From assembly GCA_965637545.1 (NCBI GenBank), contig OZ281496.1, forward strand, positions 24,862,001 to 24,926,000: a DNA stretch of 64,000 bases. The letters run 5' to 3'. Positions 5,705 to 62,122 of the stretch are shown in pieces (position 1 is the stretch's first letter; each line of letters begins with the position of its first letter). Under the pieces are notes generated by a model, which saw only the letters and a list, made by a program, of their open reading frames with translations, ran no database searches and was not told where the DNA came from. Position numbers and translations under genes: made by a program. The DNA is from Phallusia mammillata (lineage: Eukaryota).

Positions 5705-8700
5705 TTAGTTTAGCGTTTGCTTCGGCTTGCGTACTGAGTTGGTTTGCATAGAGCTGCTTACAATCGACGCGCGCAAAGAGTCATTTTTTCTTCTGATCGC
5801 ATTCGGCTGGCATTTGAGAACAGCCAGCAAAGGTTGCAACCACATGTTTCTGACTCGGTTTTGTCGGACGCAGTTCACAATGAAGATGAAAATTCCCTGA
5901 AAGTACAATGTGATGAATATTTATTTATTATATGGATACTGTGAACAACGACTGGTAACGCTACAGAATTGATGTGTTGAAATATTTTGTCTCAGTTTTC
6001 GATACCAACGTGCGAGTACCGAGGGCCGATTTACACCATAAGAATACGGACAACTTTATGCCAATATTTGCTTCGGACAGTACAGCATTAAAAAACAGTT
6101 CCGCCAGGTTACTTATATCTTATTCGCTATCATGTGGAGATTACATTTTTTCGGCATGTGTGTATGCACGCCTGTACCCCGACCATGGCAGAAAAATTAG
6201 CCAATGATATACAACTAAGTACAACACTACACTTAAGTACTCGGTAATCGTACTCGGTACTCGGTATCGAAGGTATTTACATGTGGTACTCGCACTCGGT
6301 ATCGGTACTCGCTTCAAAACCTGGTATCGTCCCATCACTAAAAGTTAACCATCTTCATTCGTACCTGGGTGCAGTTGAAAATGGTAAAAAGCCAAGCCAT
6401 AACCGTTTGATAAACAACGTGATCAGCCGCAAGCATAAGAAATCCAAACACCCATGTAAGGCCCATCATAATCAGCAACATCACGGCTATCAAAAAGTCT
6501 TCTCTTCTACTTCTTTGCTTGGCTGTGGATTGAATCTGTAAAAATGTGTGCATACGCAATAGAATTGTTAAATTTTAAATTGGTTGAGTATACAGAAAAC
6601 TTTTAAATTTATCGTACCACTTTCTTGCGACAGGTTAGTTTCTTTATCACCAGGCTGAAGAAAACGATGTTAGCAATTGCCAATGCTCCAATGGGGACCA
6701 AAAAACCATAGTAAAGCGAATACTCATGCAGCCAGCACATGTGCCGCGCACGGTAAGCCGATTGAAAGAATATGTCACCTATGCAAAACAATTGAATCAT
6801 ATATAGCACACTATTGCGTTCTGGCAAAACAACGTTATTTTAAAAACTGAGGTACGTACTAAAATTTGTTGTAACCATATTCACTTTTCAATTGAGATAA
6901 AAATCATCGCAACTCAGCGCATTGTTTGGCGAATTCGTGAAAACTTACCGGGATTTGCGTTTTGATTGTCGAAGTAAAATATTGCCACACATGCGTCGAC
7001 AATCACAATCACAGACGGTGTAACGTACGCTATGATCGTCGGAATGTTGGATGGGGCTTCACCCAGCGTAACCTGTTTACGTATTCGCAACAGTTTACGT
7101 GTAATGTCTTTTAAATATGTGTATTCGCAGCACGCGGGTAAAAATTAAACAGTTTTATATCAGTGTCAGGGCTTCTGATTTTGGGTTGTACGCGGCTCAC
7201 CTGTCCTATGGAAAAATTACTTTGGATAACCGGTACCCATTTGGTAATGCGATGCGCAAGATTAAGATTTTTCATAAAACCACATTACTTTTCCCAAAAA
7301 GAAAAAGTGGGCGTAAAAGCTTAAGAAGCCCTGGCCTAAAAGTTTAATTAAATACGACACAATTGGGTGCCGCCAAACTAGCTTTGAACCGTCAGTTTAG
7401 TTTTTGTAGGTTTTTCGCCTTCGTTACGTTTTGGGGCAAATAAAAGTTGCATACCTTTGCTAGGGCCTTGTACATATTGTGTGCGTTCATTGTCATCCAG
7501 AACCACGCTGCTAGTAAGAAGTAATGTAAAAGTGCGGTGCTGATGTAACAAGCCATGCTGTCTTCGACACGAGACGATCCACTTAAAAAGACGACGTTAG
7601 CCACGAGCAGACACGCACATATGTTTACCAGAAACTTCGTTGTCTGTCGATTTCGGAGTTCTCTGTAAGCGAAAATTTGTGTGTAGGTTTCTATTTTCTC
7701 CTTTTATTGTAAAGATATAACGAATTAATTTTCTAACTTACATAAGTTTAAAGTTAAAGACTATTTAATGGGTGTAGTGTGTGTTTAACATGTGTGGCTG
7801 GCGATATGTATTTTTTCACTCATAACTTAACAAATTATTATCTTCACAAATTAGCGTTATTTGGTAACTTACGTTATTGCAAGATAAATGAGCATCGTCA
7901 GTGAAAATCCAACTATAGACAGCGAACAGCCGATGTAGCTAACGATGCCCAGGATAAAGGCTGAAGGCAAAATCTTTGTACTCTGTGGATTTTAGCAAAT
8001 GTTAAAAAATTTTGTTTCATGATTTAACACCATCACTACGAAAAAGATAGGTTCGAGTGTTTTTATGAAATGTGTAGTCAAACCCACCACTATCATTGAA
8101 AAACTCGCGAGTCGGTAACACTTGCACCGGGGCGGGGAACTTCCAGGAATAAGGGTACATCCGTTAGGTACCCATTTCCCGTCAGCTCGTTGGTATACAC
8201 TGCACTGGGTCCTCGTCACTAAAGACTAACAAACGAAAACAATGCACATGTTTGTCATTGAAAAGAAACTTTTGAATTTTGTCGAAACATCTGAGTAATA
8301 AAATGTAGGTTACTTTAATCATGAGGCTTCAGACACTCAGCATGAGCGATGGAGACAACAGTCGCGTATAATAACAGACAGAAAATTGGGTTCGAAAGTT
8401 AAAAATGTATATACATCAGTACATAAATATACCATAAACAAATGATGAATTGAAAATAAATTGTAGTAATGAAGTCAAATGGTGGAATTTGTTGAGGCTT
8501 ATCAAAGTTTTCAGTCTAGGTAATTAGTTTAAAAGAAATTGAAATAACAGTTTTCCAAAGCAAATTTCGAACCCAAAATATGTATATAGTTTTTGGTATG
8601 TGCCAATCAGGAGTTACCTGTAAGCTTCCGTTTCCAAAAGGATGCTCTCCTTGCCTATCGGTCGTGTTGGAAAATAACAAGTCGATAGCGTTGGTAGTCC

Positions 8701-11700
8701 GTGCGGGATTAAAGCCTCGAATGTTGGCAGATATGACCTGCAGATTAATGTTTTAGTTGACCACAAAACCACTCAGAATACCAAAATTTTTTACTTTGCG
8801 CCAAAATGCATAAATTTAAGGGCTTGTCTGTACTGTTGTTGGAGTTTCTGTAACGACTACAAGCGTTTCTGTACGTTTTTTTGCTGTGTGTGTTGCATAC
8901 AACGAATATTTACGGGTGATGGACATTAATGAAGTGCATTCTTATCAACCAGATTCAGCGTGTATCTCACCAACGGTGGATCTTCCGCTGCTGGAAATAG
9001 CGCCGGACTGCTGTGGAACACAAACGAGGCACGGACTGGTTGAATCGCAGGAACCACGACAGGAGGTTCCGTTTCGACAACCGGAGGCTCAGTTTCCACA
9101 ATTGGTGGATCTACAGTTTGCACTGGAGCTGGAGGATTGGTGTTTCCAACCCCGGGCGTGGACGCAGTTGTGCTGGTCGTTGTGCTCGTAGTGGTACTGG
9201 TGGTTGTGGTCGATGTCGTGGTTGTCGCTTCCATGATGCTGGCCTCAGCTTCGTCCAACAGCAAACCGGGTAAGCTGATTACTACTACTGCGGTCGGGAC
9301 AAACGTTCTAGCAAGCACTTCTCGCCCAGGAGCAAATGTTAAAGGTGAATACGGTGCCTCTGGCGATGCTTTCACGGGCTCGGTGATCTATTAAACAGTG
9401 ACATATGCTGTCATCATTTTTTAGATACGGCATATACCGAGAGAAAAAAACGCTTTAGTTCGTACGGTAATAACACCATTAACACGTAAACAAATGTTCG
9501 CAATTATGATGTATTGGCACGAACAAAATCTTATAAGGATATATTCAAATAACCTGTATTGTTGTTTGAGGCGTTTCCAGAGTTATAGTGTTTGTACCCT
9601 CGGGTAGTGTAACTCTTTGTATAAACTTTTGTAGAGCATCGTATAAAGCTTTCTTTGTCTCCGCGTTAGATCTGCAAGATGTTAGATTTTTGCAAACTTG
9701 AAAAGGCTATAGGGGCAATACTGTGGCTATTTTAACATATTTGGTGCTCAGTGCCCATCAAACCAAAAGAAGTAGCTCTTAAAATGCTCAAAATACTTAC
9801 GTTGTTGTCTCTTCTGCATCGCTGTCATCATAATTGCGGCCACCCAGTTGGTCAATGATGTTTATGACGTCAAAAAGTACGTTCACCGTGATCTAAGATT
9901 GTATTTGTTTAATTACATTCTTGTTTCGAGTTTTCAGTTATACGTATAAGTATGATCACATTTTACAATTTGGTGGAACTGGACTTGCAAAAAAATCTTA
10001 AAAAACATTCTTCTAAATATGTCAACTTTTAATGAAACAATTACGATTCTAGACAACTCTGTGGCGATTTTTACCTCGACTTGATCTTCGTCGCTCTCAA
10101 CAATGGCGATCAATGTTTTTGTGATATTTGCCACACCTTCTTGAGAAACATTGCTCTCAGCAGTTGTCAACAGCTTAAGGCTTGCAACAGTTTCTTTCGC
10201 TTGTTTGGTTGTAATGTTTTCAGTTTTAAACTGAAAGAATTCTTAGAACTTTTAATTTTTGCAAAGTTATGATGGCCTTTTGCAATGAACGCAATAAACC
10301 TACCTCTTGTGTCACTTGGTTTAAATTAGTCTCGCACTCCAAAACGTGTGGTTCGCTAAAATAGGCAAATTCAGGATATGTTTCGTTCCTCAAACAATCA
10401 ATTGATGCTTTCGCCCTGCCTAAAAATACGAAATATGCCTGTACCATAACAGAACATGTCGAAATAATTTTTTAGCCAAGGCATTTGTCTGTCGTTTCAA
10501 AGCTACAAAACCCTTTGTTGATTTGTCTTTTGTTTTAAACATGTGCTGATGTTCCAGTTATGTGTACTCACCTTTTTGGCATGTTTGGACTGACAAAGAT
10601 GTAAGATCTACTCTCGTTCTGTTAAAAGACAGGAAATCTTCTTTTCGGCCGTCGTAAATTGTAATTTCGGCACAATAAACTGGAACAAAAATAACGTTTG
10701 AATCTTTGGACGTTTATTTGGTTTTTGCCTTAATCAGCAGCATACCGTTAGTCGGCAAACTTGGTGGTAAGGCTGGCACGGTTGTTGGGGACGTTTCTAT
10801 AAAACAAAGTTGAAAACAGATCAGTTATCGATGAGTTGGACAAAAGTTTGTAAAATTGCAAATACCTTCTTCTGTTTCCTTCGTGGAATGAAAAGTATCA
10901 TCAGTGTCTATTTCAGGTTTTGTTGTCGTGTTTGTCATTGATTTTGTTTTTGCCTCTGCAGCCGTTGTCATGTGGTGCGTAGAAATGTCTGTAGATGCCA
11001 GTGCCGTCGTTTCCGTAAAAATTGTTAAACCACTGGTTGTCATATGCGATGTTGCGCCGGTTTCTGTGTAAGTTGAGGCGGAATCAGACTTATCCGTTCT
11101 AGTTGTTTTTGCTGGTGTGGTATCGGTATTAGACCCTGAAGTGATTTCATCCATTGCAACTGCAGTAGAACTTTGTAAATTCTCTGCTTTTGGTGTGACA
11201 GTACTATCTGGTCCATTAGTAGCAGAATTTGATCCTTCCATTGTGTCTGTAACTGTCTCGTGCGTATTATCTGTCGTAGGTATAGCACCAGTAGAGTCAA
11301 CCTTGGTTCCCTCCTTTGTAGCTGTTGTTGGTTTAGTATCGGTTGATGAAACGAGTGGATCTTTTGTGTTGGTAACATTCGTTGATTGACCGCTTTTGGC
11401 CAATGTAAAGGCTATCGTCTGTCGAGCAGCATTTGTGGTTCCCAAATTTTCACTGGTACCTAAAGCAAACCGACTTGTTGTAACACCATGCTTTTTTCAA
11501 TATAGGGTGATTTTAACATTTTTTGGGTAATTAAAAGAAATACAGTATAAGCATCGACTAACCTATACCATCTGTTTGTTGTGGCGTAGCATCGTCTACT
11601 GCTTCTGTTGTTACATCCTCGATTCCGTGTGGTGTTAGGTCTTCAGTTTGTTTGGTTGTTGGGTTTAGAGTTGACACTATTAGTAGGGAAGAAGAAGAGG

Positions 11701-14700
11701 TTAGGGGAATTTTAACCTCCGTGATGTGTAGTTTTTTATGATATGGTTGGACAATTTTATGTAACCAAATCCGTTACGTGGGTAAATATTCATGTTACGT
11801 TATTCGTTTCAAATTACTAAGTAACGATTTTTTCAACTGAAGTGAGTGTGATTTTGGGTTTAGTTCTTGCTTTATGCCGTTTACGAATTACATAGGTCTT
11901 CAAAACCGTACTTACGTTGGACTGATTTTTCCTCGGAAGTAGTGCTAATTGCTATTGTCGCTGTGTTGGCTATGGCCAGTGAAGCACTGGTTGCGGCAGG
12001 AGCTTGAATGGTCGTTGGTACCATAGTTGTTAGTGGTTCCACAGTGGTTGTTACCAGTTCAGAGCCTGTTGAATGACTGGTTATTGTTTGTGTCGCTTCA
12101 TTCGTCGAAGTTGGTGCAGATATTGAAACTAGTTCAGTGCTTGAAACTGGTTCTGTGTTTGTTGCCGGTTGTGTGTTTGTAGATTGTGCCTTAGTAGTTT
12201 TTGCTTCTTCAGTGAATGTAACTGTTGTGGTATTTGACATCATTTCAGTACCTGTAGATGGTGTGATGGTTGTCACCAGTTCTGTGATTACAAAATGCTT
12301 TAAGTTTGAAAATGAATATTTGTGTCGGAAATGGTCGTTTCTATTTAAATTGTTAAACTATTCAAATACAACGCCGATTTTTTCCTTGTTTCTGCATAAC
12401 TGTTTTATTAAAACAATGATTTAAAGTCAGTTATGATGGTGTATAAAAGCAAAGCAAAGTTGTTTCTACCCCCAAAAGTCAGACGTCACCATCAGTTTGA
12501 TTTTCTACACCGCACGCGTTTTAACAAACAGTTTACTACTGAAAAAGGAAAAAAAATAAACGCTAGTTTACCTGCACCAGCCGTTTGTGCTGTGGCATAC
12601 TCAGTTGTCTTTGTGGTCACTTCTTCGTTTACTTGTGTCGTTGTACCTGCAGTTTGTATTGTGGTTAGGTTAACGGCCTGTATTACCGCATAACATATTG
12701 TGTTAGAATAAAATTATTGAATTATTTTCACCTCAAGGGAATTGTTTTTGTTTAACCATAAATAAAGCAATGTTGGTTGAGGTTTTCTGTTTAATTATAT
12801 ATATTTTATTGTTTTTTGAAGACAACAAACTTTAAACTGGCGGTTTTCCCCCGCTATAAACGTAACATGGATGGACAGAATAGACATATTTCAACTTTAG
12901 TTACATTTTATATTAACCCGTCGGTTTACCAATAGTTGCTGTGTATTTGGTTTGCAAGTTGGTTGATACAGCTCTTTTCTTGTCCGTTCGTGTTATCTGT
13001 AATACGAATCCCCAGACACGCTTTACTAGGATGGCCACGTCGTAAGTGTGTGTATGTGTCCCTATGATCTCAACATCGATGTTGTCTATCGGGTAACTTA
13101 AACAGGCCTCGAACTCCACGTTGACCTGTATTTCTGGGTCAGCTGTGGTGGATATGTTTTGATATCCTTCTAGCACGCTGACTAAAAAAATAGAAAAGTA
13201 CGTTGCCAGTATTCAACAGTATTGATTTTTTCCTGTCGAAAATGTTTACAAATAACAACATTCATTTACAGCTTAGTTAGAAATTGTTCGGCATTCTAAG
13301 TTACTTGTACACTGAAAACTTGTTTCTCGCATTGCTAATTTATTTCCATAAAACATAATTACCAAATTTTAAACAACACACACGATTGCTTACTATTGCT
13401 TCGCCTTTCACACACTAGGCCCTTGCTTTTTCCACAGCCTTCTGTAAACCATTGGCCATTGTTTAGTACGACGCAATTTTTATCAGCAGCAGTGCTGTTC
13501 GATTCCGATTTGCCAAATCGTGACTCGCTTGGCAACAATGGAGTTCCGTCTATCCACGTAAAGTTGCTGAAAGTTTCCGTTAAATCGAAAAGTCCAATCC
13601 AAAGTTCCACGTGAGTATCTGTTGGTGTTGTTTCAGTTATATTTTGAAACATTAGCAGCATGAGCTCAAAACGAATTTTTGACATAATCTGTATTCAGTA
13701 ATTCTTGTAATAGTTGTAATGGCAACATTTTCTTATAAAAGTTGTATCAAAGTTAAATCAACATTGCTCAATTTCGCACCTTTCGTATTAACCAGGTTAT
13801 TTATGAAGTTTGATGTATAGTTGCTTTTCACCATTGCAAGTGTCGCATTGAATCGCTGGCATTCGTTTTGAGCCTCTTCGAACTCGAAGCTTGCCGTCCC
13901 ATGTATGAAGTATTCGGTCGGTCCGCACCCGTACCACTTATCTTCTGCAAAAATACATTTTTTACATTTCCAATACCTTCGGTTTGCGCCTTTCAATTCC
14001 ATGTTATCAGTTTACAAATTTTTAAATCCAGTTAACCTTTGCTACCATTTTTTTTGTTTACGGTACATTTTTATAAAATTTGGTTTGAAAAGTTTCGAAA
14101 TCACATTTAGTGCAATTAGCAGTTGAAACTCTAATGAACCTGTAAATTGTGCTTACCGACATATGGTGCTGAAGTGGTGGTCACCAGTTTATACCTTGCG
14201 GAGGTTGACACTAGCTCAGTGGTTGTTTCTCCCAGGGTTGTTGCTGTTTTAGCGTTTGTTGGTGTTGAGGTGCTTTTCACCAGTTTAGTGGTTGTTTCTG
14301 GTGCCGTGGTTGTCTGAGGTTCAGTGGTTGTTTCCAGTTCAATTGTTGTATCTGGTACCGTTTTCGTGGTCTGTTCAGTGATTGAAACTGATGCTGTGGT
14401 TGTATCTAGTTCAATGGTTGTTGCTGGCACCGTGGTTGGCACTAGTTTATTAGTTGTATCTGGTACTGTTTTCGTCGCCTGTTCATTGCTTGTGGCTGGT
14501 GCGGTGGTTGTTGTTTCAGGAGTTGTATCGGGTAATGTGGTTGTCACAACATCAACGCTTGTCGCTGGTACTATGGTTGTCACTATTTTAGTGGTTGCAT
14601 CTGGTTCTGCGGTTGTCAACAGTCCAACACTTGTCGCTGATGCCATGGTTGTCACCATTTCAGTGGTTGGAACTGGTTCTGCGGTTGTCACTAGTTCAAC

Positions 14701-17700
14701 GCTTGTCACTGGTGCTGTAGTTGTTAATATTTTAGTGGTTATATCTGGTTCTGTGGTTGTCACCAGTCCAACGCTTGTCACTGGTGCTGTAGTTGTTAAT
14801 ATTTCAGTGGTTGTATCGGGAACTGTGGTTGTCACCAGTTCAACGCTTGTCGCTGGTGTTGTGGTTGTAACAAGTTTGGTATTTGCAAACTCCGTGGAAG
14901 TTGGAAACACTCTCGTTGTTTCCGATACCGTCGTTACGTAATCTGTTGTCCTGTCCGCGGTCGTTTCTGCGCAAATGACTTGTATTATAATATTTTTTTT
15001 TCAATAGTGGTACTAGACATTTCTCTAAAACTGTTATGTTTCCTGCAGCTGCTAAATACAGTATTTCCTTCAATTTGCTTTTTAATATTAAAAATGTTTT
15101 TGTAGTATTTCAATTAAAAAAAAATCATGTATGCAACATGTATTTGTGGAAAAATAAAATTTAGTTACCTGCATGTGTCGCTGGTCGTGTTGAGGCACCG
15201 GTGGTTTGTTTTGTGGTTACTTGGGTAGTTTCATGTGGTGTTGTGTCGGTATTTTGTTTTGTCGTTGGTTGCGTAGTTGGTGCTACCATATCACCTGTTT
15301 TAAAATGTAGTATTTTTCTTTATATACACTCAGACGTAAATTTTACGTTTTTTTGTTTTGTTTTGGAAGTCGTAAATCGATTTACTGCCATAAAAAAAAC
15401 ACCACGAGAGAACTGTCTTTATGGAATTATTAAGATTTTTTTATTTTTCGATATGTAATAGTAGTAATTTGATTTTTTAAATGGACTTACTTAGATAGGC
15501 TTTCCATTTAATCTGTAACATTGTGGAGAACCCTGGTTCGTCGTCAGTTCTAGTCAAGTTTAATGCGAATCCCCAAACATGCTTTGCCACAATGTCCAAA
15601 CTATAAGTGTAATTGGTGTCCATTTGAACCTCAACTTGTATGTCGCCAATAGCATAACTTAGACAGGCCTCATACTCCACATTGACTTCTATGGAGCGGT
15701 TAGCACTGCCGGAAATGCGCTGACATCCTTCCAGTACGCTGACTTAATACAGTAGAAAGTTTCGTTAATTGTCTTTTTGTCCAAAACAAATGTGCAACTT
15801 ATACGTTCTTAACCATATGGCTTCAACGATAGTGCAACTGACGCTGTTTTAAATGTCTTTAATTTATTACCTTTGTTATACCCTGAAAACTTGTTTACGT
15901 ATGTATAAATGGTTTATTCTCATTAAAGTTGCTGCTTACTCAATACTTAACGTTTAACATTACTTACTATTGCTCGGCCGTTCACACACCAGGCCTCTGG
16001 TAAACTTGCAGTGTCTTGAAAGCCAACCTTCCGGCTTAAGCAGCAAACATAACTCTTTCGTATCATTATGGAGCCAGTTTCCGAAGAATCGTGACTCGCT
16101 GGGAAGCAGAGGACTTCCGTCTATCCACATAAAACTATTTCCTATTCCAGTTGGGTCTATAAGCCCAATCCACATGCCGCTGGAAACATCTGATGAAGAA
16201 AACGGATAAACTGTATTAATTCAATTTAAGTCTATTACCAGTTTGCCAATTATGTTTTTACGCCAGATTTCTTGATGAATAAGAAACCCGACCTAGTTCC
16301 CATAATTTCTGCTCTTACCTTCAACCACAGTTAGGTTTTTTAAGAATTGTGATGTGTAGCTGCTTTTTATCACTGCAAGGGTTGCATTGAATTTTGCGCA
16401 TTGGTTTCGCGCCTGGTAGAAGTCGAAACCCTTGTGTGTGTATATTAGGTATTCGGTTGGTCCACATCCATACCACTTATCTTCTGCAAAAGAATGCACC
16501 AATTAAACCAACTTGTTGCCGTAACCAAAACTGAAACTAGCTAGGTTATATGGGTTGTGTATATTTTTGACCTCTGCATAAATTGCCTATGTTATAGTAA
16601 ACTGAAGCTTTACACTTACAACCAGGAAGATTCCTGTATAAGCTCAGTTTTATGATTGTCTATGTTGTTTCAAAAGATAATGATTTCGGTAACGTGTTTT
16701 TTTATATATAAAGGATAATCCCATGAACGAAAGCAGTAACAGTTTATGATGGACACACAAAATTCTCGTATGCACAACAGACACTAATGTGAAGTTGTTT
16801 TTAGGACTTTTTTCTCTAAGTGGGATATTTTAGCGACTGAGCAGATTTTGTTGGTAAAACTGTCTGTTACCCTTGCAAGTGTTTGTAAACAATTTTATTC
16901 TAAAACGGACTTTGTTGTAGCTGTTATATAAATCCACCCGGCCTATCAAATGCGACATATCGAAATCAATCACATTTTGTCCGTATGTCTAATGCAGTGG
17001 TTCTCAAACTTTTTTGTTGTCGGGACCAAATGGTAGTTTTTTAAGTGTGTAGGGAGCCGCAAAAAAACGAAACATTGAGAAAATCACTAAACATTATGAC
17101 TTTGAAAGCTAAAATACCAATGTTTGGTGGTTTTCTGAGGTCTGGTGCGAGCCGCAAAATAAGTAGTTTGGAGCCGTATGCGGCCCCGAAATCCGAGTTT
17201 GAGAACCACTGGTGTAATGGCTGATGTCATGAAAGAATATGTGTTCATCTCAGATGGTGTAACTTTTTAACGTTTTGTTAAATCAACTTTTTTGACTTTC
17301 ATGGGATAGGATTTTCAAGTTGTTACAGTTAAGATCACAATTATTTGCCTTTTTGTGTAACAAATGTTAATTAATTCATGTGAAACGTTTTTTTCACGTT
17401 TCCACAAACAATGTCGTTATCAGTATGGATTTTGTACTGAAAACAAGTTGAAATTTTCATCGAAAGTTGAGGCTTTTTGTTCATTAAATGATAAATTGGA
17501 TAGAGATAACCCAATTGGGCTTCTAAATTAGATTACACAATTAGAGTCTTACCAATGGGAGGGTTTGTCGCCAAGGCCATGCTTGTTACTGGTGGTGTAG
17601 TGGTTTCCAGTGATGCGGTGGATGCTACAAGTGAGGTTGTTGCTTTTGCGGTGGTTGCAATTGGCATTGTGCTTATTGCTTGTGCAGTGGTAACCGCTGG

Positions 17701-23700: not shown

Positions 23701-23900
23701 GCCGCATTGATTCCATACTTCCACTGCATTAAAAACATCAGTTACTATAACGTAAGTTGCAGAAAATAAGGCGCATTTTTGCAGTATGGAGAAATTTTTC
23801 TATTCTGTCACAAATTGTTAATGCCAGGTTACATCCATCCCGAATTTCATTGATCTTTGCCCCAAATAGACCTTAACATCCGGGTAAATTTCTCCAAATA

Positions 23901-23937
<37 letters not shown>

Positions 23938-47300: not shown

Positions 47301-50300
47301 ATTTTGGTGGAGAACTTCCAGCAACCAATCTACAGCCGTTCGGAATCCATTTTCCGCTGGCTTGGTAAACGCTACACTGTGTCCTGGTTACGACGTCCTG
47401 TTGATTTACCCAGAAACACTTCGTTTTGTGGCAATGTAGATTCAAAGTTAATTTTGATGTTTGCTCCAAACATTTTGTTGAATTATGACACTTTAATTAC
47501 ATAGTAGTGATTTACCTTCAACGATCCGTTTGTTAATGCGACATTTCCTTGCTTTTCGCTTGTGTTCGTGAAAGTTAAGTCAATTGGTGCTTTGATTGCT
47601 CCGCCTTTGTGGCCTTTCACATTCACAGTGATTACCTAAAACGCAATTTAAATGTTTAATGATATTAACCAAATCACTTTCCAAATGTAGTTTATTGTAT
47701 AACTGTTAGTTGATCTTTCCTCCAGTTCATGATGAACACTGTTAAATGGGTTTGATGCGTTATGAACTATAGGCCTATTATACATGGATCTTAGATGCTG
47801 TCTTACCATGGGTGCTTTTTCAGCTGCAGGAAAGAGTGTTGAGCTTGAATGAAAGATAAAACTCGCTCGGACGCTTGTGTTGCCGCCTGTTGAGCCCACG
47901 GCGTCCAATACCGACCCAGGAATAGTTGCAGTAACCACATTTGTTCCTGCTATTGCGCTGTTGTTTCCAGGGGCGAATGAAACCGAAGCATACTTGTTTT
48001 GTGCAGTCTTCTTGGTTTGGCTCACCTAACAATTAATCGCATGTATATTTTGCGACACTTCGGCCATTATAAACATTTCAGCTTCAGGTTTTCATGCACC
48101 AATTGGTAAAAATATGTGTGTGTGTTCTCAAGTGTTGGTCGTAGCAATCTTGTTGTACCTGTATTGTTGTTTGGTTTGTTGATATTGTTAGGACAGTAGT
48201 GTTTGCAGGGAGCGTTACTCGGTTGGTGAATGTCTCCAAGCTTTTCGTAAGAGAAGCTTTTTGACTTGCAGCGGTCCTGAAAAAACGCATATCATGAAGG
48301 GAAATTCTGTACAACGAACCTTCAAACTTTATTGTTTTACTTACTTGCTGTTAGTGGTATTTTGGAATGTAGCCGCAACCTGGTTGGTGGTTAAAAGAAC
48401 GTCGTACATCGTGTTAACGGTAATCTTTAAAGAAAAGTAAGCATGGTTTTCTTCACGTTCTCATTTACGGCTACACCAAAATGTTTCACAACGAGCTTTC
48501 GCAAGATTTTGTCCAACCTGAACTTTTTGAGGATCCGTGGCACTTAGCTCATTGAGAGCAGCCGTGGCGTTAGCAACATCTGCCTTATTGAGTTTTGCTG
48601 GACTGCTTGTCAGCAGTTTCAGCGTTGCAACTGCCGTGGTTACACTTGACGTTGTAGCTTGTGACACATTGATCTGCAACAAGCACAACTTACGGTGACT
48701 TTAATGTCGGGTATAAATTGATTTGTAATTTTAGTTTTCATTGGATAAGGAAAGATTATAAACTTATTTTAGCACTGACGCTTGCAAATGTCGTTTTAAA
48801 TGTAGACACTTCAAAGCAACGTACACACACTAAACCAAACGCAGAACATGCAACCCATGATCATGATTAGAATACACCATAATTAGAAACGTTCAGACGG
48901 GATTGGAAAAAGAAGTTTATGCTGACGCAAGCATTCTGATATGAAATGGACCCCAACAGTGTATAAAGGATAAACATGGGCACTTTGTATCCTTAGTGGC
49001 AAGTTCATTTACCGTTGTTGACAAGCTTCCTAATGTTGTTCCGCAGCTGATTACAATCGGTGTGCCGAAGTACCCAGAGTTTGCATCTGTTGCGTTTTGT
49101 AAACAGGGTGCTGATGCCTCAGGATTTCCTGTATATTTGCAAGTTGTTATGTAAGTTTCAACACTGTGTTGTACTAAAGTATTTTTAGGGATATAACACC
49201 CACTTTAACAATTCTTTGCAACACTACTTGTTTGGTAAGTTTGTCACTCACCTGTTGAAGAACATGTTTGTAGTGAAACTGCAGTTTGTCCAACCTCAGC
49301 TTGAGCGAAATTGAAGGTTTTGTTCGACGCCGATACAACTTTTGACTTGCAAAACACTGTAATACGTATGTATGGTTTTTGATAATTGCTTGCAAGTAAC
49401 ATATGAAATTTCAATAGGTTTATTCCCAAAACGACAGCAGCAACTGTTTTTGTGCACTACTAGTAAGGCCTATAATGTATGAGCCTCCATCACGGTTTAC
49501 AATACCGAAACGAGGCCTTTGCTGAAGACTGATTAACGCATCCTAATTTTCTAATTACAAAACTGAAACACACTGTTCGACATTCTACATTGGTAGGGAT
49601 TAATTAATTAGTCACTGTATTTTTTACCTGCGGGTGCTGTAGCTATTGGTGTGCTTGCAACAGTTGTCGGTAAGGCTGTAGAAGCTAAAACAAACAATTG
49701 TAATAGAATCTGTTGCTAATGACACATTGACGTTTCCTAACGGTATTGGAAAGCTTGAATAATCTACGTTTAAGAATTCTGTGTGGGTATATATGAGTAT
49801 GAGTATATTTGAATTAAGATTCAATCGCACAATATCGTGCAATGATAAAACGTGATAATTTTGAACATAGATTTGTCTAAAGCTTTGGACTATTAAAAAG
49901 CTTATCTGTGTTGTTCTTACCTGCTGCTGTAGTTGTTGGTGACGCTGTAGTAACTAAACACAAACAACGCTTTAATTGTGTTACGTACAAACTTAGATAT
50001 GCATGTATTGGTCAAAACGTTTTCGTCACATTTAGAAAATGTTAAGTTCGCTTTCTATTTTACCTACCGTTAACTACTTGATAGAAAAGGCTTAGTTGAT
50101 TGCTCCAGCCTGAATTTGTGTCCGTCCTTGTTATAATCGCTACAAACTTTGTGTCACAAATGCTTGTAACTGTTGAAGTAAAGCTTTGGTTCGCGTTGCC
50201 GGTGACCACAATCATAACATTAGCAGTTGTATTGATAGGTGAGCTGAATACAACCTCAACAGTTTTATTCTGTAATGCGCTTGCAGCGACTGTGACCGTT

Positions 50301-55074: not shown

Positions 55075-55165
55075 TTTCTCTCTGCATGTCATCAGACCAC
55101 CAAGTTTCCCCACGATAAAGTTTGGATTTTGGTTTGTAGTAAACAGTATGAAGCAAATATTAAAT
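55075..55165 (-). pseudogene. Orphan degenerate copy of receptor C's last coding exon
   Basis: Reads FASYCLLQTKIQTLSWGNLVV* versus C FALYCLLQTKIRTLWWGNLVACVTCRDNE*; 1-nt deletion, stop, no splice acceptor; downstream flank resembles 36590-36720. Confidence 0.85.
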
Positions 55166-55651: not shown

Positions 55652-58600
55652 TTAGATGCGAGTTGAAACTGATCCTGAAGAACTCCTTGGTCCTCGTTTG
55701 TGTTGTTCCTTTCGGCACGTGATGCAAGCTACAAAAGCTCCCCACCACAAAACACGGATCTTAGTTTGTCGTAGGCAGTTTAGGACAAAAATGAGGAATC
55801 CCTGGGACACACAAAAACGAACAACTTTAATCAATGAAAAAAGTATTGTATAATTGTACGCCATGGGAAAAACTTACCTGCGTGGAATTGAAAATTGTGA
55901 ACAGCCAGCTCATTATAGTTTGGTATGTTACGTTGTCAGCAAGTAACATAAAGAATCCAAAGACCCAAGTGAGGCCCATCATGATGCAAACAGCAACTGC
56001 CACCGCAAAGTCGTCTTTGGGGTTGCGTTTTCGGGCTGACGAGGATACCTGCAAAATTTTAAAATGTAAAGTTACAAAACGTGTAAGATAAAGTTTATCT
56101 CGACGTCATACACTTTAGTAGGGTGCTTTAAAGTACTTTGGAAGCATTTACAGCGCTACCGATTTGCTTACAAGTATTACGACTGGCAAATGTCAAGTTG
56201 CAGAAATCCCAAGCACCCACTAGTTATGTTTTTGCTTTACCGACTGTAGTACGTAGTCAGACATAGCCTTCGGAACCTAGTCTTCCATTTTGTTGAACGG
56301 GAGAGCCATGATTTGAAATTATTAGGTTTGTTTTTTTTGCTACCAACCTTAGTTCTTAGACAAGTTATCTTGCATATTACTATCACAAAGCAAGCGATAT
56401 TGCACATTGCCAAGATTCCAACTGGCAACAGAAACCCGTAATTAAGCGAATATTCGTTTAACCAGCACATATTCCTCGCTTTGTAGACCGATGTAAAGAA
56501 AATGTCATCTGAAAAAATATGGAAGGAAATAAGTTTTCCAAACAATTTTCAAACTGATAAAACAGTCGATGTTTAAACTCGCGTTCAAAATTCACAATCG
56601 TAGACGATTGAAAAAAAAACGATAACTGTGTCGAAATGTACCTGGAAAGTAGTTGTTTTTATCAAATACCGCCGAAATTGTGCTGTCGATGGCTATAATC
56701 ACTATTGGACCAACATAACAAATGACTGCTGGTATGGTTGATGATGTGCCACCGATGTAAGCCATCTAAAACAGCGTTTGCTTAATTAAATTTTCGATAT
56801 TCGATTTTTAAACATCATTTTCCAACATGTCTAGTTTAGCGTGTATACTTCTATTGTCATATTGATAGCCCTTTGTAATGACTTGGAATATAGTGTCTAT
56901 ACTATTACCGTAGTCAGAGCTTTGTACATGTTGTAAGCGTTGGCGCTCATCCAAAACCAAGTGGTGAGCAAAAAGTAATGGAGAAGACCCGTGACAATGT
57001 AACATCCGATCGTATTTGAAGTCCATCCAACACCAAACAGGAAGATAATATCAGCTATCAGAAGGTTGAAACAGATGTTCAACAGGAACACTGTTGGTTG
57101 TCGTCGACGTAGTTCCCTGCAAAATGTGTTGTTTATGACATTTGTCCGTAAAGTAAACTTCTGGTGCAATATATTTTCTCATCAACAGTAACTTTAAATC
57201 CGTCTATAGTCTACGGTCGGCTTTTACTCTATCAGGGCTCTTCATCCTGTGTACCTCTTTGTTTTGCACAGCTTTTTAATAAGAATGTTTTGCAAACGAA
57301 CAAAATCGAATTCTCGTTTTGCGAAACGCCCACCTAACGTTACAGCATCCCGTTTACTCTCATTTATTTAGCACAGTTTGTAATAAGTATTGTTTTGCCA
57401 ACGAACGGCTCAAGTGCAAACCGCCCGCTTGTATTGCAAAACCACCACAGTGGCCATTACCACCCGTTAAAAACCTTTACTTACTTGATGCCCATGTATA
57501 TTCCAATGGTGGCTATCAAGCCGAGCACCGATAATGCACAACCGATGTAACTAACAACTCCCATTGCGAAAGCGCTCGGAAGAATCTTTGTGCTCTTAAA
57601 GATAACATATCGGCTAAATTTTGTCGTACAACATACATCTATGATAGAAAATATAGAACCTACCACTATCATAGAGAAACTTGCCAAAACTGCACATGCA
57701 CATTTCGGTGGAGAACTTCCAGCAATCAATCTACAGCCGTTCGGAATCCATTTTCCGCTGGCTTGGTAGACGCTACACTGTGTCCTGGTTACAACGTCCT
57801 GTTGATTTACCCACAAATCGCTTCGTATTAATTTGTTGCAATGTAGACCTAAATTAATGTATCCGAAATGTATAATAGTATTTTCCTGTCCAGCACAGAC
57901 ATTTTGAGTCAATATTAATTCGGAAACGCAGAACAACAATGTTTTCTATGTGTTGGGTTTGTTCGAAATCGTTTGTAGAAAGTCATGGCACTGGTAGTAC
58001 ACCTTAGTGATTTACCTTTAACGATCCGTTTGTTAATGGAACATTTCCTTGTTTTTCGCTTGTGTTCGTAAAAGTTAAGTCAATTGGTGCTTTGATTGCT
58101 CCGCCTTTGTGGCCTTTCACATTTACAGTGATTACCTGAAACGCGACTCAAAGGTTCAATCAAATAGTAATGTTATCCAATTTTGTAATGGTTAGTTGAT
58201 CTTTTCTCTAGTTGATGATGGACAATTTAAGTCTAATTGATTTGATGCTTTATAAACTATAGGCCTACATATATGGATGTTTGGATGTTGTCTTACCATG
58301 GGTGCTTTCTCAGCTGCAGGAAAAAGTGTTGAGCTTGAATGAAAGATAAAACTCGCTCGGACGCTTGTGTTACCGCCTGTTGAGCCCACGGCGTCCAATA
58401 CCGACCCAGGAATAGTTGCTGTTACCACATTTGTTCCCGTTATTGCGCTGTTGTTTCCAGGGGCAAATGAAACTGGAGCATACTTGTTTTGTGCAGTCTT
58501 CTTAGTTTGGCTCACCTAACAAATAATCACGTGCATATATTGCGACACTTTATAGACTCGTGGGCTTAAGGTTTTCCTACAGCAATTTGATAAAAAAGCC

Positions 58601-61600
58601 GTGTGTGTTTGTGTGTCTTTAAAATCTGGTTGTAGTATTCTTTTTGTACCTGTATTGTTGTTTGGTTTGTTGATATTGTTAGGACAGTTGTGTTTGCAGG
58701 CAACGTTACTCGGTTAGTGAATGTCTCCAAGCTTTTGGTAAGAGAAGCTTTTTGACTTGCAGCGGTCCTAAATAAAATACAACTCGTAAAGGAAAAATTC
58801 TACTTTAAATCTATAAACTTCCATTTTTACTTACTTGCTGTTAGTGGTATTTTGGAATGTAGCAGCAACCTGGTTGGTGGTTAAAAGAACGTCGTACATC
58901 GTGTTAACGGTAATCTTTAAAGAAAAGTATCGAAAGTATAGTTTTTACAGCTGCAAAGAAAATTTTCGTTTTACAAGATGTCTAACCTGTACTTTCTGAG
59001 GATCCGTGACACTTAGCTCATTGAGAGCAGCTGTGGCATTTGCAACATCTGCCATATTGAGTTTTGCTGGACTGCTTGTCAGCAGTTTCAGAGTTGCTAC
59101 GGTGGTGGTTACACTTGATGTTGTAGCTTGTGACACATTGATCTGCATTGAACATCACTTTTATTAACTTTACTGCAAGTCAAAATTATTAATGTGTGAT
59201 TTCAATTTTCATTGGATAAGGAAATTGATCATAAAGTTTGTCAGAAAACGAATTTATTCTAGTACTGACGGTCGCAAGTGACGGTTTTAAATACAGACAT
59301 TTCAAAACAACGCACGCACGTAATCCAAACACAGAACTTACAACGCATTTTGTAATGAGAATATAGATGAACTTTGTTATGGACTTTCGACGTTCAGACG
59401 GGATTGAGAATAAAACTGTAAACTGGCGCAAATAGTTGAAAATGATATGGACCCCAACAATGTATAAGGATATGCACTTTGTATCTTTAGTGCAAGTGCA
59501 TTTACCGTTGTTGACAAGCTTCCTAATGTTGTTCCGCAGCTGATTATAATCGGTGTGCCGAAGTACGCAAAGTTTGCATCTGTTGCGTTTTGTAAACAGG
59601 GTACTGATGCCTCAGGATTTCCTGTATAAATGCAGGTTATAAAACATTCAATAGTGCGTTGTACTTTTTGTAATTAAATAAAGAACTTTTGGCGTACATA
59701 TAGTACCGTATGCGTTTGCAACCAGTGTTGTTTCTTATTTTGTCACTTACCTGTTGAAGAACATGTTTCTTGTGAAACTGCGGTTTTTCCCACCTCGACT
59801 TGAGCGAAATTGAAGGTTTTGTTGGACGCAGAAACAACTTTTGCGTTGCAAAACACTGCAACACACATGCATGCTTTTGATTAGTGCACATCACAAGTAG
59901 TAGTAACACTCATAATATGGAGTATTATGTATTAGCCATCATCATAGTAAGAAACAAGTGTTTACCCTTTATAACAGTTGGTGTGTTAGGTTTGGGACTT
60001 GTTTTTGACAGGGCTGTCGTCGTTGCTAAGGGGGTCGTCGTCGCCAGGGGTTTCGTCGTTGCTAAGGGGGTTGTCGTCACCAGCGGTGTTGTCGTTACTA
60101 AGGGTGTCGTCGTAGCTAAGGGGTTGGTGGTCACCAGGGGTGTCGTCGTTGCTAAGGGTGTCGTCGTGGCTAAGGGCGTAGTTGTTGCCAGGGGGGTGGT
60201 TGTAGCAGGCGGGTAGTCTGTTATTGTATGCTTGTTTTATGTTTTACCTGATTTAAACACTAGCAGTCTATTCATGTCACTTACAAAGTTGGGCTGTGTA
60301 TTGGATCGAAAGCTGATTGGGAAATGTTGCTTTTTTGTCTAGCCTGTTTATCGTGGTCTTGAAACCCCATGCTTCAGCCAGTGTAGCGGTAGCGATAAAC
60401 TTGTATCCAACAGCAGTCGCCGTGACTGTGATCGATAGAGGGGCGGGGTTTTGGCATACTTCAAATGGGATCGATGCATTCACTTGTGGCTTTGTCCGGT
60501 TTCCATATAATACCGTGTAGGTTCCGCTTAAGGTTGCTGAAAACGACACGATTAGCAATTAATAACAATACAAGACAAGTTTGTTTGTAAAACTAATCCA
60601 ACAACCACAAGGAATACAATTTGGTTTGGCTTTTGTACGTCTTGTTAAAAGTATGCAAAACAAAAAAAATCTGCATTCTTCATCGAACAACGGTATCATT
60701 TCTTCATCGAACCACGGTAAACGCTAAATAGGAAGTTTACTTTACATGACGCATGGCACATCGCTGAAGGATGGGGATTTTTCATGTTGAGTGTTAATTA
60801 GTTGTACGTGGGGGTGGCGCGTTTCCGTAGTTTTGTGTTTGCTGCTCAAATTATTTTTTGCAAACCTTTTTAATGCATGGGTCAGCTTTTGTGTATAATT
60901 ATACACTATAGTATAAATTACTCTCACTATAGTTTTGTAATGTTAAAATCGCCACATGATATGAAATATTTATTAAATGAAAAACCCAAATTAACGTTTT
61001 ATGGTCTTGTTACATTTGCATGAAAGTGGACTAAGAGACTATTATGTCTGTACATAACGCAAGTGTTCCCCAATACTATCCTAAGTTAGGTCGCAAAAAC
61101 ATGTTTATGTATGCAAAACAGTTTAAGCTGCGTAATAAAGTTTTTTTTTTTCAAAACTGACCCAGCATTGAATTGTCTTGATATTGTTTAGTTTCTTCAA
61201 AAACACTGTAGCAAATCTATGGTCTACATGCTACTGTTGGTATAGTGTTTGGTATAATTTAACAACGTGGTCCATCAAAACTCCAGAATCGTTTTTATTT
61301 AAACTTACTTGGCCTCCTTCTCTGACACAAACTGGGCTTTAATTGTTGGCAATCCCTTGCTGCCCATGACGAATATTTTCCCACAGCAACGCAGTCAGGT
61401 TTTGCTTTGTTGTTGTTTGTAATCTGACCGCCCGCAAAATTTTTTTCGCTTTCCAGCAACGGCGTGCCATCAATCCAAGTAAAGTTTGTTGCAGTGCCGC
61501 CTTTGTCCTGCAAGCCAATCCACGTTGGCACTGCATAAAATCAACTTAAGTTATAACTATTTGAAACCCAATTTAAGATGGACCGTTTTGGCCGAAATGT

Positions 61601-62122
61601 CATAATAGCTGACTATCTGGATTATTATCTCGCGAATGAACAACTCTCATGTGCGTTGCTGCGTGTACAGACTTTTACGAAAGTCAGAATTGCCTTTTTA
61701 TGTTTGTAGCAACTATGTGCGACAAAATATTCGAACGCCCGCTTTTGCTTTATAAAACCAAGATACTTTTAATTAACTTGTTCGACACTAAAAAACAATA
61801 CCTGTAACTATTTGTGTCCATTTAAGAAACGTTGTTGTACCAGACGACTTTATTATTGCCAACGTTCCGTTTAGAGACTTGCATTTCAAAGTGGCATCAG
61901 TAAAATTTAAAATTGTCGAATCAACCGCATACTCAAGTGTTCCGTTGGAAAACCAAGTCATACCTGAAAAATTGAATAACACAAGATGACACTTTACTTT
62001 GGCAGTAATTAAAACTATGTATAGAACAACGTAATTACATAATAAGAAACCACATTCTTACCCAAACTGGTGCTTTGACTCGTTATTACGAGGCAGACAA
62101 ACAGCCAAAGATTTCCTCGCAT
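55652..62122 (-). CDS. Adhesion GPCR 'E', 19 exons, about 973 aa: SP, CTL, X, (PLATTT)n mucin, HormR-like, GAIN/GPS, 7TM
   Basis: Exons: 62122-62062 (MRGNLWLFVCLVITSQSTSL), CTL 61963-61802 + 61530-61309, X 60536-60285, mucin 60217-59966, 59855-59751, 59621-59506, 59142-58987, 58914-58835, 58767-58650, 58515-58297, 58135-58016, GPS 57798-57664, 7TM 57594-57485, 57116-56909, 56765-56642, 56508-56348, 56048-55878, 55801-55652. Confidence 0.92.
60010..60200 (-). repeat. 18-bp coding tandem repeat, PL(A/V)TT(T) x10, stalk of receptor E
   Basis: Translation PLATTT PLATTT PLATTT PLVTTN PLATTT PLVTTT PLVTTT PLATTK PLATTT PLATTT. Confidence 0.93.

What the first reader, a model, noticed from the sequence alone, without database searches (positions are those of the whole stretch)
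5705..62122. Tandem array of five adhesion GPCRs with mix-and-match lectin-like ectodomains
Seen: five co-oriented genes with the same 14-exon HormR/GAIN/7TM core but different heads (A: 7X+6CTL; B: 2X; C: none; D: 2X; E: CTL+X) and different stalk lengths. Essentially all ectodomain exons are phase 1-1, so they can be shuffled or skipped in frame. Inference: a diversifying family of glycan or microbe sensors coupled directly to G-protein signalling, analogous to expanded innate-immune receptor arrays. I do not recognise this architecture from vertebrate aGPCR subfamilies.
Basis: partly seen in the sequence, partly recalled or inferred. Interest (0 to 1): 0.88.

Follow-up and report, generated by a model that had tools for sequence, protein, structure and literature searches.

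The report
Five sea-squirt lectin-headed adhesion GPCR genes
Five neighbouring, intact sea-squirt genes encode GPR128-like adhesion receptors with the same 14-exon body but different outer heads built from two lectin-type modules, a clear case of exon shuffling; what they bind and whether they are expressed remain unknown.

Summary
On the minus strand, 5705-62122 carries five co-oriented adhesion GPCR genes, A to E. My models have 40, 20, 15, 22 and 19 exons and encode 2925, 909, 660, 926 and 973 aa. Every junction is AG/GT and no model has an internal stop.

All five share a 14-exon core with conserved intron phases.

Corrections:
- The core is not HormR. It runs collinear with vertebrate ADGRG7/GPR128.
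- "X" has no sequence family, but two AlphaFold models match H-type lectins (Z 8.1-8.7).
- The C-type lectin domains lack the canonical EPN/QPD and WND sugar-site motifs.
- The GPS site lacks the catalytic His and Thr, so these receptors probably stay uncleaved.

D is a chimera of a B-type head on an E-type core (dS 0.23 for both halves). D/E dN/dS is 0.11, which indicates purifying selection.

No RNA support was found, so the immune-sensor reading is untested. The scan had already found H-type-lectin-like adhesion GPCRs 19.9 kb beyond this window in the same genome (s1-405476).

The parts
5705..25304 (-). Gene A: 40 exons, 2925 aa. Order: signal peptide, X, X, CTL, X, CTL, CTL, X, stalk, CTL, X, stalk, CTL, X, stalk, CTL, X, three stalk exons, 14-exon core.
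25238..25304 (-). A signal-peptide exon (phase 0-1)
24861..25154 (-). A Xa, an H-type-lectin-fold module, phase 1-1
24313..24585 (-). A Xb. The acceptor is weak; 24564 is the alternative.
23082..23744 (-). A CTL1, two exons (23550-23744 and 23082-23318)
22481..22726 (-). A Xc
21210..21956 (-). A CTL2 (21795-21956 and 21210-21446); no X follows it
19717..20854 (-). A CTL3 (20657-20854 and 19717-19950)
19300..19551 (-). A Xd
18986..19144 (-). A stalk exon (Ser/Thr/Pro 56%)
18233..18910 (-). A CTL4 (18746-18910 and 18233-18463)
17867..18118 (-). A Xe, the sequence used for the first AlphaFold model
17553..17720 (-). A stalk exon
15968..16483 (-). A CTL5 (16319-16483 and 15968-16189)
15491..15742 (-). 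A Xf
14157..14966 (-). A large mucin-like stalk exon (810 nt) holding 72-nt tandem repeats
13394..13944 (-). A CTL6 (13780-13944 and 13394-13618)
12918..13181 (-). A Xg
10866..12281 (-). A membrane-proximal stalk exons (11916-12281, 11563-11676, 10866-11459)
8088..10679 (-). A core exons c1-c8 (GPR128_N-like, GAIN, GPS); c6 carries a Thr/Ser/Pro-rich insert
5705..7982 (-). A core exons c9-c14 (7TM and tail)
26517..35472 (-). Gene B: 20 exons, 909 aa. Order: signal peptide, X1, stalk, X2, two stalk exons, core.
35421..35472 (-). B signal-peptide exon
34834..35088 (-). B X1
33948..34193 (-). B X2, a subtype without the Cys pair or the WGF motif
33571..34598 (-). B stalk mini-exons (34542-34598, 33738-33791, 33571-33627); this span also contains the X2 exon
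30175..33427 (-). B core c1-c8
26517..29733 (-). B core c9-c14 (7TM)
36757..43075 (-). Gene C: 15 exons, 660 aa. The signal peptide is joined directly to the core; there is no head.
43024..43075 (-). C signal-peptide exon (donor CAG|GTAAGT, phase 1). Its junction to c1 is inferred, not shown by RNA.
38508..41021 (-). C core c1-c8; c8 is 21 nt longer than in the other genes
36757..38469 (-). C core c9-c14 (7TM)
44380..52973 (-). Gene D: 22 exons, 926 aa. A B-type head on an E-type core.
52922..52973 (-). D signal-peptide exon
52339..52593 (-). D X1
51269..52367 (-). 379-bp tandem unit x2.9. Each unit carries one 57-nt stalk mini-exon (52059-52115, 51680-51736, 51297-51353).
50068..50313 (-). 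D X2
49628..49953 (-). D stalk mini-exons (49921-49953 and 49628-49684)
47263..49356 (-). D core c1-c8
44380..47202 (-). D core c9-c14 (7TM)
55652..62122 (-). Gene E: 19 exons, 973 aa. Order: signal peptide, CTL, X, stalk, core.
62062..62122 (-). E signal-peptide exon
61309..61963 (-). E CTL (61802-61963 and 61309-61530); Pfam Lectin_C E 2.6e-10
60285..60536 (-). E X
59966..60217 (-). E Pro/Thr-rich stalk exon with an 18-nt repeat, about 10 copies
57664..59855 (-). E core c1-c8; c1 gives a weak GPR128_N match and c8 a GPS match
55652..57594 (-). E core c9-c14 (7TM)
55098..55163 (-). Fossil of a C-type last exon between E and D (82% aa identity to C c14, 59% to E, 50% to D)

Best explanation
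These are five functional, tandemly duplicated paralogues of an ascidian adhesion GPCR lineage. The body of each protein (N-terminal GPR128_N-like domain, GAIN/GPS, 7TM) is collinear with vertebrate ADGRG7/GPR128.

Each protein has a signal peptide, then a gene-specific head, then the conserved core. The head holds 0 to 7 copies of an ~83-residue six-stranded beta-sandwich with the H-type-lectin fold ('X') and 0 to 6 C-type-lectin-like domains. These sit on Ser/Thr/Pro-rich, presumably O-glycosylated, stalks of very different length.

The GPS site has lost the catalytic His(-2) and Thr(+1), so the receptors probably remain single uncleaved chains. The tethered-agonist-like segment (xFSMIV) is kept. 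The inferred mechanism is that ligand binding or pulling on the head changes the GAIN/7TM interface and switches on G-protein signalling without cleavage.

Head diversity arose in the germline by duplication, loss and recombination of symmetric phase-1 exons. CTL-X cassettes were duplicated inside A. Stalks grew by three kinds of tandem repeat. D was made by one unequal crossover that put a B-type promoter and head on an E-type core.

Shown here: gene structure, domain content, fold similarity, loss of the cleavage residues, the chimera and purifying selection. Inferred: expression, that head and core sit on one transcript, the ligand (glycan or protein), and signalling.
For: Gene structure. 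All five full-length models are intact, every splice site is AG/GT, and the 14 core exons and their phases are conserved.

Domains. Pfam finds 7tm_2, GPS and Lectin_C on single exons. c1 matches GPR128_N at E 4e-4 in C and E, and c3 matches GPR128_GAIN_subdomA at E 0.012. By phmmer, the C core aligns to frog ADGRG7 over query 12-421 / target 103-500 and again over the 7TM, full E 6e-28. The best vertebrate hits of the Phallusia relative P0002 are all ADGRG7.

X fold. Two AlphaFold models (pLDDT 87 and 84) each cover the whole domain. They match Helix pomatia agglutinin (Z 8.6 and 8.7), discoidin I residues 158-251 (8.5 and 8.1), SLL-2 (7.4 and 8.1), and phage tailspike and pyocin fibre tip domains (up to 9.3). 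Clearly unrelated folds score 6.4 or less.

GPS. The alignment shows V/K/I/R in place of His and A in place of Thr in all five genes.

Phylogeny. A-E are monophyletic (97/94) with branching order A,(B,(C,(D,E))).

Chimera. The D core is 79-94% identical to E at DNA level, introns included, and the D head is 70-87% identical to B. dS is 0.227 for D/E core and 0.228 for B/D X1. A fossil C-type last exon lies between E and D, where the crossover model predicts it.

Selection. dN/dS is 0.11 for D/E core and 0.30-0.33 for the B/D X exons.

Stalk repeats are documented.
Against: No transcript evidence. Four RNA-like public runs laid on 41300-47299 gave contigs only on intronic or intergenic repeats and none on D's exons. 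No protein of 425-1351 aa matching B-E exists in the 5.8-billion-protein collection.

Every junction, including signal peptide to head to c1, is predicted from sequence only. Several acceptors have weak polypyrimidine tracts (E c3 and c8, B c9, A c11, A Xb).

The GPR128-specific Pfam hits are below their gathering scores, and the 7TM tree does not resolve a sister relation to ADGRG7.

X has no sequence-level link to H_lectin. Z values of 8-9 are only moderately above background for small beta-sandwiches.

The C-type lectin domains lack EPN/QPD and WND.
Confidence: 0.72

Rival explanations
1. One reading: the array is a diversifying family of glycan or microbe sensors wired directly to G proteins, analogous to expanded innate-immune receptor arrays.
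For: Both head modules have lectin-type folds. Head architecture differs between all non-recombinant copies, and the head exons are frame-neutral cassettes. The cluster continues beyond the window with more X-array receptors (earlier scan note s1-405476).
Against: The C-type lectin domains lack the canonical sugar and Ca2+ ligands. X resembles H-type lectins in fold only, and its binding residues were not tested. dN/dS is 0.11-0.33, which gives no sign of positive selection at this resolution. No expression data were obtained, and none after microbial challenge.
Confidence: 0.2
2. The heads bind endogenous partners, such as matrix, tunic or cell-surface glycoproteins. On this reading the receptors act in cell adhesion, mechanosensing or morphogenesis, as most characterised adhesion GPCRs do. 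The stalk sets the reach of the head.
For: Non-canonical C-type lectin domains usually bind proteins (established knowledge of the CTLD superfamily), and these lack the sugar motifs. Stalk length varies widely. Relatives in Phallusia, Ciona and Styela carry EGF heads typical of matrix and adhesion proteins. Selection is purifying.
Against: Nothing direct. The fast turnover of head architecture among tandem copies is unusual for receptors with fixed endogenous ligands.
Confidence: 0.3
3. Gene-model artefact: the lectin and mucin exons upstream of each core belong to separate secreted-lectin or mucin genes, and the true receptors are all short like C.
For: No RNA evidence joins head to core. C shows that a signal exon spliced straight to c1 gives a complete receptor.
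Against: All head exons lie on the same strand and are phase 1-1, matching c1's incoming phase 1. No head ends in a terminal exon with a stop, and no signal-peptide exon was found directly upstream of c1 in A, B, D or E. The recombination that made D kept head and core together as one unit with equal dS. X-array adhesion GPCRs were also reported next door (s1-405476).
Confidence: 0.1
4. Most copies are unexpressed, decaying duplicates, and only one or two function.
For: No exon-covering RNA contigs for D in four runs. B-E are absent from public protein sets. A C-type copy between E and D has already decayed to a fossil exon.
Against: There are 116 exons with no stop, frameshift or broken splice site. 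dN/dS is 0.11 between the youngest pair at dS 0.23. A-C have diverged to 40-56% identity yet remain intact.
Confidence: 0.08

Closest known systems
Vertebrate ADGRG7 / GPR128
   Same: Collinear body of GPR128_N-type domain, GAIN subdomains A and B, GPS and 7tm_2. About 30% identity over about 580 residues. Best vertebrate match.
   Different: ADGRG7 has only a short N-terminus, with EGF-like matches only below the Pfam cut-off, and keeps H-T|T at the GPS site. The genes here carry X, C-type lectin and mucin heads and have lost His and Thr. Sister status is not resolved by the 7TM tree.
Ascidian-specific adhesion GPCR radiations: '24 unclassified Ciona Adhesion' (PMC2396169) and the unassigned families ADGRN/ADGRX in Ciona and lancelet (PMC8584163)
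   Same: Lineage-specific, tandemly expanded tunicate adhesion GPCRs without clear vertebrate orthologues. Same clade as the EGF-headed proteins of Phallusia, Ciona and Styela.
   Different: Those papers describe mostly GPS-only or simple ectodomains. They mention no C-type lectin or H-type-lectin-fold heads and no head swapping.
Amphioxus adhesion GPCRs with Lectin C-type domains (PMC2246102)
   Same: C-type lectin domain fused to a GPS/7TM adhesion receptor in an invertebrate chordate.
   Different: Different lineage and core. No X module, no repeated CTL-X cassettes, no tandem head variation described.
H-type lectins (Helix pomatia agglutinin, SLL-2, discoidin I/II C-terminal domain)
   Same: Six-stranded beta-sandwich of the same size. 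Z 7.4-8.7, rmsd 2.5-2.9 A over 80-87 residues, covering the whole domain.
   Different: No detectable sequence similarity. Those lectins are soluble trimers that bind GalNAc at subunit interfaces. Here the domain is a monomeric bead in a receptor chain, and its binding residues were not tested.
Polycystin-1 and sea-urchin REJ receptors
   Same: C-type lectin domains and a GAIN/GPS module ahead of a multi-pass membrane region (established knowledge; PMC9672506 was listed but not read).
   Different: 11-TM polycystin-type membrane part with PKD/REJ domains, not a class-B 7TM. No homology of the bodies.

Membership tests
Adhesion GPCR (class B2) | Secretin-type 7TM domain (Pfam 7tm_2) | tested here: met
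   E exons c10, c12 and c13 match 7tm_2 (best 40.2 bits against a cut-off of 20.6). All five align to P0002's 7TM.
Adhesion GPCR (class B2) | GPS motif with its four cysteines directly before TM1, inside a GAIN domain | tested here: met
   C c8 gives GPS 25.2 bits (cut-off 22.5). E c8 gives 20.5 bits, just under that cut-off. The GAIN region is collinear with ADGRG7 GAIN A and B.
Adhesion GPCR (class B2) | Autoproteolytic triad H-L|T/S at the GPS site | tested here: not met
   All five have [VKIR]-L|A. This is not disqualifying, because several accepted adhesion GPCRs are uncleaved, but it predicts that no NTF/CTF split occurs.
ADGRG7 / GPR128 family | GPR128_N domain (PF22257) | tested here: inconclusive
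   c1 of C and E scores 21 bits, E 4e-4, below the cut-off of 27.2. A scores 13 bits and B gives no hit. Only single exons could be scanned.
ADGRG7 / GPR128 family | GPR128 GAIN subdomains A and B (PF22259, PF22261) | tested here: inconclusive
   C c3 scores 16.5 bits against a cut-off of 22. Full-length phmmer collinearity with five ADGRG7 proteins supports the relation.
ADGRG7 / GPR128 family | 7TM groups with ADGRG7 in a tree | tested here: inconclusive
   The deep split has 65/79 support only, and few other ADGR families were available.
C-type lectin-like domain | Pfam Lectin_C above cut-off, WIGL motif, conserved cysteine framework | tested here: met
   41.4 bits against 22.6.
C-type lectin-like domain | Ca2+-dependent sugar site (EPN or QPD, plus WND) | tested here: not met
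   The corresponding positions read EPI, EPL, EPT, NPL, WLH, SES, QIT and LSS, LLS, WLV, WQS, WLS, WFT, WAA.
H-type lectin | Six-stranded beta-sandwich fold of HPA and discoidin | tested here: met
   Two AlphaFold models match HPA at Z 8.6 and 8.7, discoidin I at 8.5 and 8.1, and SLL-2 at 7.4 and 8.1, over the full domain. These are predictions, not solved structures.
H-type lectin | Sequence membership (Pfam H_lectin) | tested here: not met
   No hit at E up to 10 for any of the 12 X domains. The X profile finds nothing in PDB sequences.
H-type lectin | GalNAc-binding residues and trimeric assembly | not tested
   This needs a residue-level superposition and experiments.
HormR (HRM) containing adhesion or secretin receptors | Pfam HRM (PF02793) ahead of GAIN | tested here: not met
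   No HRM hit on any core exon at E up to 1, nor on the full-length relative P0002.

The most novel reading that the evidence does not exclude
The window is part of a larger ascidian locus in which H-type-lectin-fold and C-type-lectin cassettes are shuffled between tandem adhesion GPCR genes by unequal crossover. On this reading the locus gives each individual or haplotype a variable repertoire of lectin-headed, uncleaved GPCRs used for non-self recognition (microbial or allogeneic). That would be a germline-diversified recognition system coupled directly to G proteins.
Probability: 0.15. Interest if true: 0.85.

Novelty: new variant of a known kind. Interest (0 to 1): 0.55.

Why it matters
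Adhesion GPCRs are a large and poorly understood receptor class. How their ectodomains acquire new modules is mostly inferred from distant comparisons. Here the process is visible inside 57 kb:
- One conserved GPR128-like body carries five different heads.
- Every head exon is frame-neutral.
- One gene (D) was made by a datable unequal crossover. Its head and body have equal dS, and a fossil exon lies where the model predicts.

The head combines a C-type lectin domain with a module that has the H-type lectin fold. I found no paper describing that combination on a GPCR. The whole clade has lost the GAIN cleavage residues while keeping the tethered-agonist-like segment, which makes it a natural test case for cleavage-independent activation. 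If the heads bind glycans, this would be a compact and tractable model for lectin-to-G-protein signalling in a chordate.

Tried and rejected
1. Automatic exon-chain models were misled by intron-level similarity between D/E and B/D. I replaced them with curation exon by exon.
2. HormR was rejected: no HRM hit anywhere.
3. RNA evidence. The run search found only DNA-like holders plus RNA-like runs at 0.04-0.05 share. Laying four of them on 41300-47299 showed that the share came from repeats at 42353-42406, 43700-43899, 45488-45783 and 46060-46836, not from exons. No more reads could be laid, so A, B, C and E were not tested.
4. Sequence identification of X failed with Pfam, with PDB sequences using the profile, and with the 5.8-billion-protein collection for lengths 46-145 aa.
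5. The representative-library search with the E GPS/TM1 exon gave only 10 hits. That was enough to find the Phallusia and Ciona relatives but no close orthologue.
6. Loci L001-L003, reached from the short protein P0011, hold a homologous receptor gene with no DNA similarity to the window: another ascidian, or a distant paralogue elsewhere in this genome. I did not pursue them.
7. Species. The importin-13 ORF places the genome among ascidians (Clavelina 54%, Ciona 52-53%, Styela 47%) but gives no exact named match. The name Phallusia mammillata comes from earlier scan reports and was not verified here.
8. Positive selection. Coarse Nei-Gojobori values show none. Site models were not run.
9. A Toxoplasma paper that mentions both an H-type lectin and adhesion GPCRs refers to different proteins, so it is not a precedent.
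Full report
Observation. Six-frame open segments of the window that resemble each other fall into five co-linear sets on the minus strand. Pfam scans of single exons of the rightmost gene gave Lectin_C (41 bits), GPS and three 7tm_2 pieces. The stretch therefore holds adhesion GPCR genes transcribed from high to low coordinates.

Gene models. I curated exon boundaries by comparing the paralogues exon by exon and requiring AG/GT sites and consistent phases.
- All five genes have the same 14 core exons (c1-c14).
- Exon lengths are nearly identical: c2 116, c3 156, c5 118, c7 120, c9 110, c10 208, c12 161 nt.
- Phases are identical: c1 1-1, c2 1-0, c3 0-0, c4 0-2, c5 2-0, c6-c8 0-0, c9 0-2, c10 2-0, c11 0-1, c12 1-0, c13 0-0, c14 0-stop.
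- Adding the heads gives A 40 exons/2925 aa, B 20/909, C 15/660, D 22/926 and E 19/973.
- Every intron is AG..GT, no model has an internal stop, and each starts with a hydrophobic signal exon.
- The finding's limits are exact: 5705 is the end of A's stop codon and 62122 is E's ATG.

Heads. Each X is one exon of 246-294 nt.

Stalks. Between the modules, and before c1, lie Ser/Thr/Pro-rich stalk exons (35-70% S+T+P) totalling from 0 (C) to about 770 residues (A). Every head and stalk exon is phase 1-1, so each could be gained, lost or skipped in frame. Stalks grew in three ways:
- 72-nt repeats inside A's 810-nt exon;
- a 379-bp genomic unit repeated 2.9 times in D, each unit holding one 57-nt mini-exon;
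- an 18-nt repeat of about 10 copies inside E's stalk exon.

What the core is. No exon matches HRM. Exon c1 of C and E matches GPR128_N (E 4e-4, below the cut-off), and c3 of C matches GPR128 GAIN subdomain A (E 0.012).
- A search of 1.84 billion representatives with E's GPS/TM1 exon found a Phallusia mammillata protein (P0002, 772 aa) and a Ciona protein (P0008). Both have EGF heads on the same body.
- Using P0002's GPS-7TM region as query, the named vertebrate relatives are all ADGRG7/GPR128.
- In a local phmmer run the C core aligns to frog ADGRG7 over residues 12-421 against 103-500 and again over the 7TM (E 6e-28). It aligns likewise to four other ADGRG7 proteins. Identity is about 30% over about 580 residues.
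- The body is therefore GPR128-like. A 7TM tree does not resolve this (65/79 support), partly because few other families were at hand.
- The same tree shows A-E as one clade (97/94) with order A,(B,(C,(D,E))). They sit next to the EGF-headed Phallusia protein, inside an ascidian clade (96/96).

GPS site. Styela and a JGI relative keep the canonical H-L|T, and ADGRG7 has H-T|T. All five window genes and P0002 have V/K/I/R-L|A. Both catalytic residues are missing, so autoproteolysis is unlikely. The following segment (xFSMIV) still resembles a tethered agonist.

What X is. The twelve X exons align with a conserved pattern but match no Pfam family. The X profile matches no PDB sequence and no short protein in the large collection.
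- AlphaFold2 on the alignment gave a confident six-stranded beta-sandwich (pLDDT 87).
- Foldseek's best small-protein hits were Helix pomatia agglutinin, SLL-2 and discoidin II (E 3e-3 to 1e-2).
- An exhaustive VIA-align search gave phage LKA1 tailspike tip Z 9.3, R1 pyocin fibre tip 8.8, Helix pomatia agglutinin 8.6, discoidin I residues 158-251 8.5 and SLL-2 7.4. Each match covers 80 or more of the 83 residues. Clearly unrelated folds score 6.4 or less.
- The most divergent copy (A's tip domain, 10-24% identical to the others) gave the same list, with values 9.0, 8.7, 8.1 and 8.1.
- X therefore has the H-type-lectin fold. Whether it binds sugar was not tested.
- After reaching this result I found that the scan had reported adhesion GPCRs with arrays of an H-type-lectin-like module 19.9 kb beyond this window in the same genome (s1-405476). 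That agrees with my result and means the array is larger than five genes.

C-type lectin domains. All seven keep WIGL and the cysteine framework. The EPN/QPD position reads EPI, EPL, EPT, NPL, WLH, SES or QIT, and WND is replaced in every copy. They are C-type-lectin-like domains without the canonical Ca2+/sugar site.

History.
- At DNA level the D core matches the E core, introns included (79-94%), and the D head matches the B head (70-87%).
- Synonymous divergence is the same for both halves: D/E core 0.227 and B/D X1 0.228.
- An unequal crossover between a B-type and an E-type gene predicts a duplicated C-type gene between E and D. A fossil of a C-type last exon lies exactly there, at 55098-55163, with 82% aa identity to C against 59% to E and 50% to D.
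- Inside A, CTL-X cassettes were duplicated in pairs (13794-13952 against 16333-16491; 17861-18121 against 19294-19554).

Constraint. dN/dS is 0.11 for D/E core and 0.30-0.33 for the B/D X exons. The older copies are 40-56% identical yet intact. This argues for function and gives no sign of diversifying selection at this coarse level.

Expression.
- The run search found DNA-like holders, and RNA-like runs holding only about 5% of the words.
- Laid on 41300-47299, those contigs cover intronic and intergenic repeats only.
- Expression is therefore unshown. This is weak negative evidence, because the runs are small assemblies and only part of C and D was laid.
- No protein matching B-E is in the public collection in the searched length range.

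Literature.
- Ciona was reported to have 24 unclassified adhesion GPCRs, mostly with only a GPS domain (PMC2396169).
- Two unassigned radiating families (ADGRN, ADGRX) were reported in Ciona and lancelet, and ADGRG7 was proposed as a family of its own (PMC8584163).
- C-type lectin domains on adhesion GPCRs were reported in amphioxus (PMC2246102).
- I found no paper joining an H-type lectin module to an adhesion GPCR.

Limits. Exons were searched singly by reference. Joined models were used only inside the closed script environment for alignment, tree and dN/dS. This weakens the domain scores for split domains (GPR128_N, GAIN, the C-type lectin domain). Some acceptor sites are weak, and A's Xb start and a few small stalk exons are tentative.

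Verdict. This is a new variant of a known kind of receptor, of moderate interest.

Noticed in passing
window 485-3340 (-): A single uninterrupted 951-aa ORF encodes a complete importin-13 (six Pfam importin-13/TNPO3 domains above cut-off). The nearest named relatives are Clavelina 54%, Ciona 52-53% and Styela 47%. It appears intronless here, directly downstream of gene A.
   Followed up: partly
window 3669-4568 (-): A 299-aa ORF with ZSWIM3_N, DUF5575_N and FAR1 DNA-binding domain matches. It is probably a transposase-derived gene or a transposon remnant between importin-13 and gene A.
   Followed up: no
window 42353-42406: A 54-nt element in the long first intron of gene C (between the signal exon and c1) is present in many contigs of all four RNA-like runs at high summed depth, flanked by unrelated sequence. 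It is a short, high-copy, transcribed repeat.
   Followed up: no
window 43700-43899, 45488-45783, 46060-46836: Repeats in the C-D spacer and in D's introns are covered by contigs from three studies at 88-99% identity. Translated segments at 43661-43957 (-) and 45461-45643 (+) are an inverted pair of related copies.
   Followed up: no
window 55098-55163 (-): An isolated remnant of a C-type last exon lies between genes E and D, with about 70% DNA identity to 36573-36849. It is the footprint expected from the unequal crossover that made D.
   Followed up: yes
window 51269-52367: A 379-bp unit is repeated 2.9 times. Each copy holds a 57-nt Thr/Ser/Pro mini-exon and a remnant of the 3' end of the X1 exon. 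The stalk here is lengthened by genomic tandem duplication of an exon plus its intron.
   Followed up: partly
L001 and L002 (ENA metagenome assemblies ERZ27241786 and ERZ27241785), about 3900-18000: These contigs carry a homologous adhesion GPCR gene whose core exons are 31-72% identical in protein to A and B, with no DNA similarity to the window. It comes from another ascidian, or is a distant paralogue of this genome, sequenced within a metagenome.
   Followed up: partly
window 26985-27097: A 49-nt tandem repeat (2.3 copies, GC-rich) lies in the last intron of gene B.
   Followed up: no
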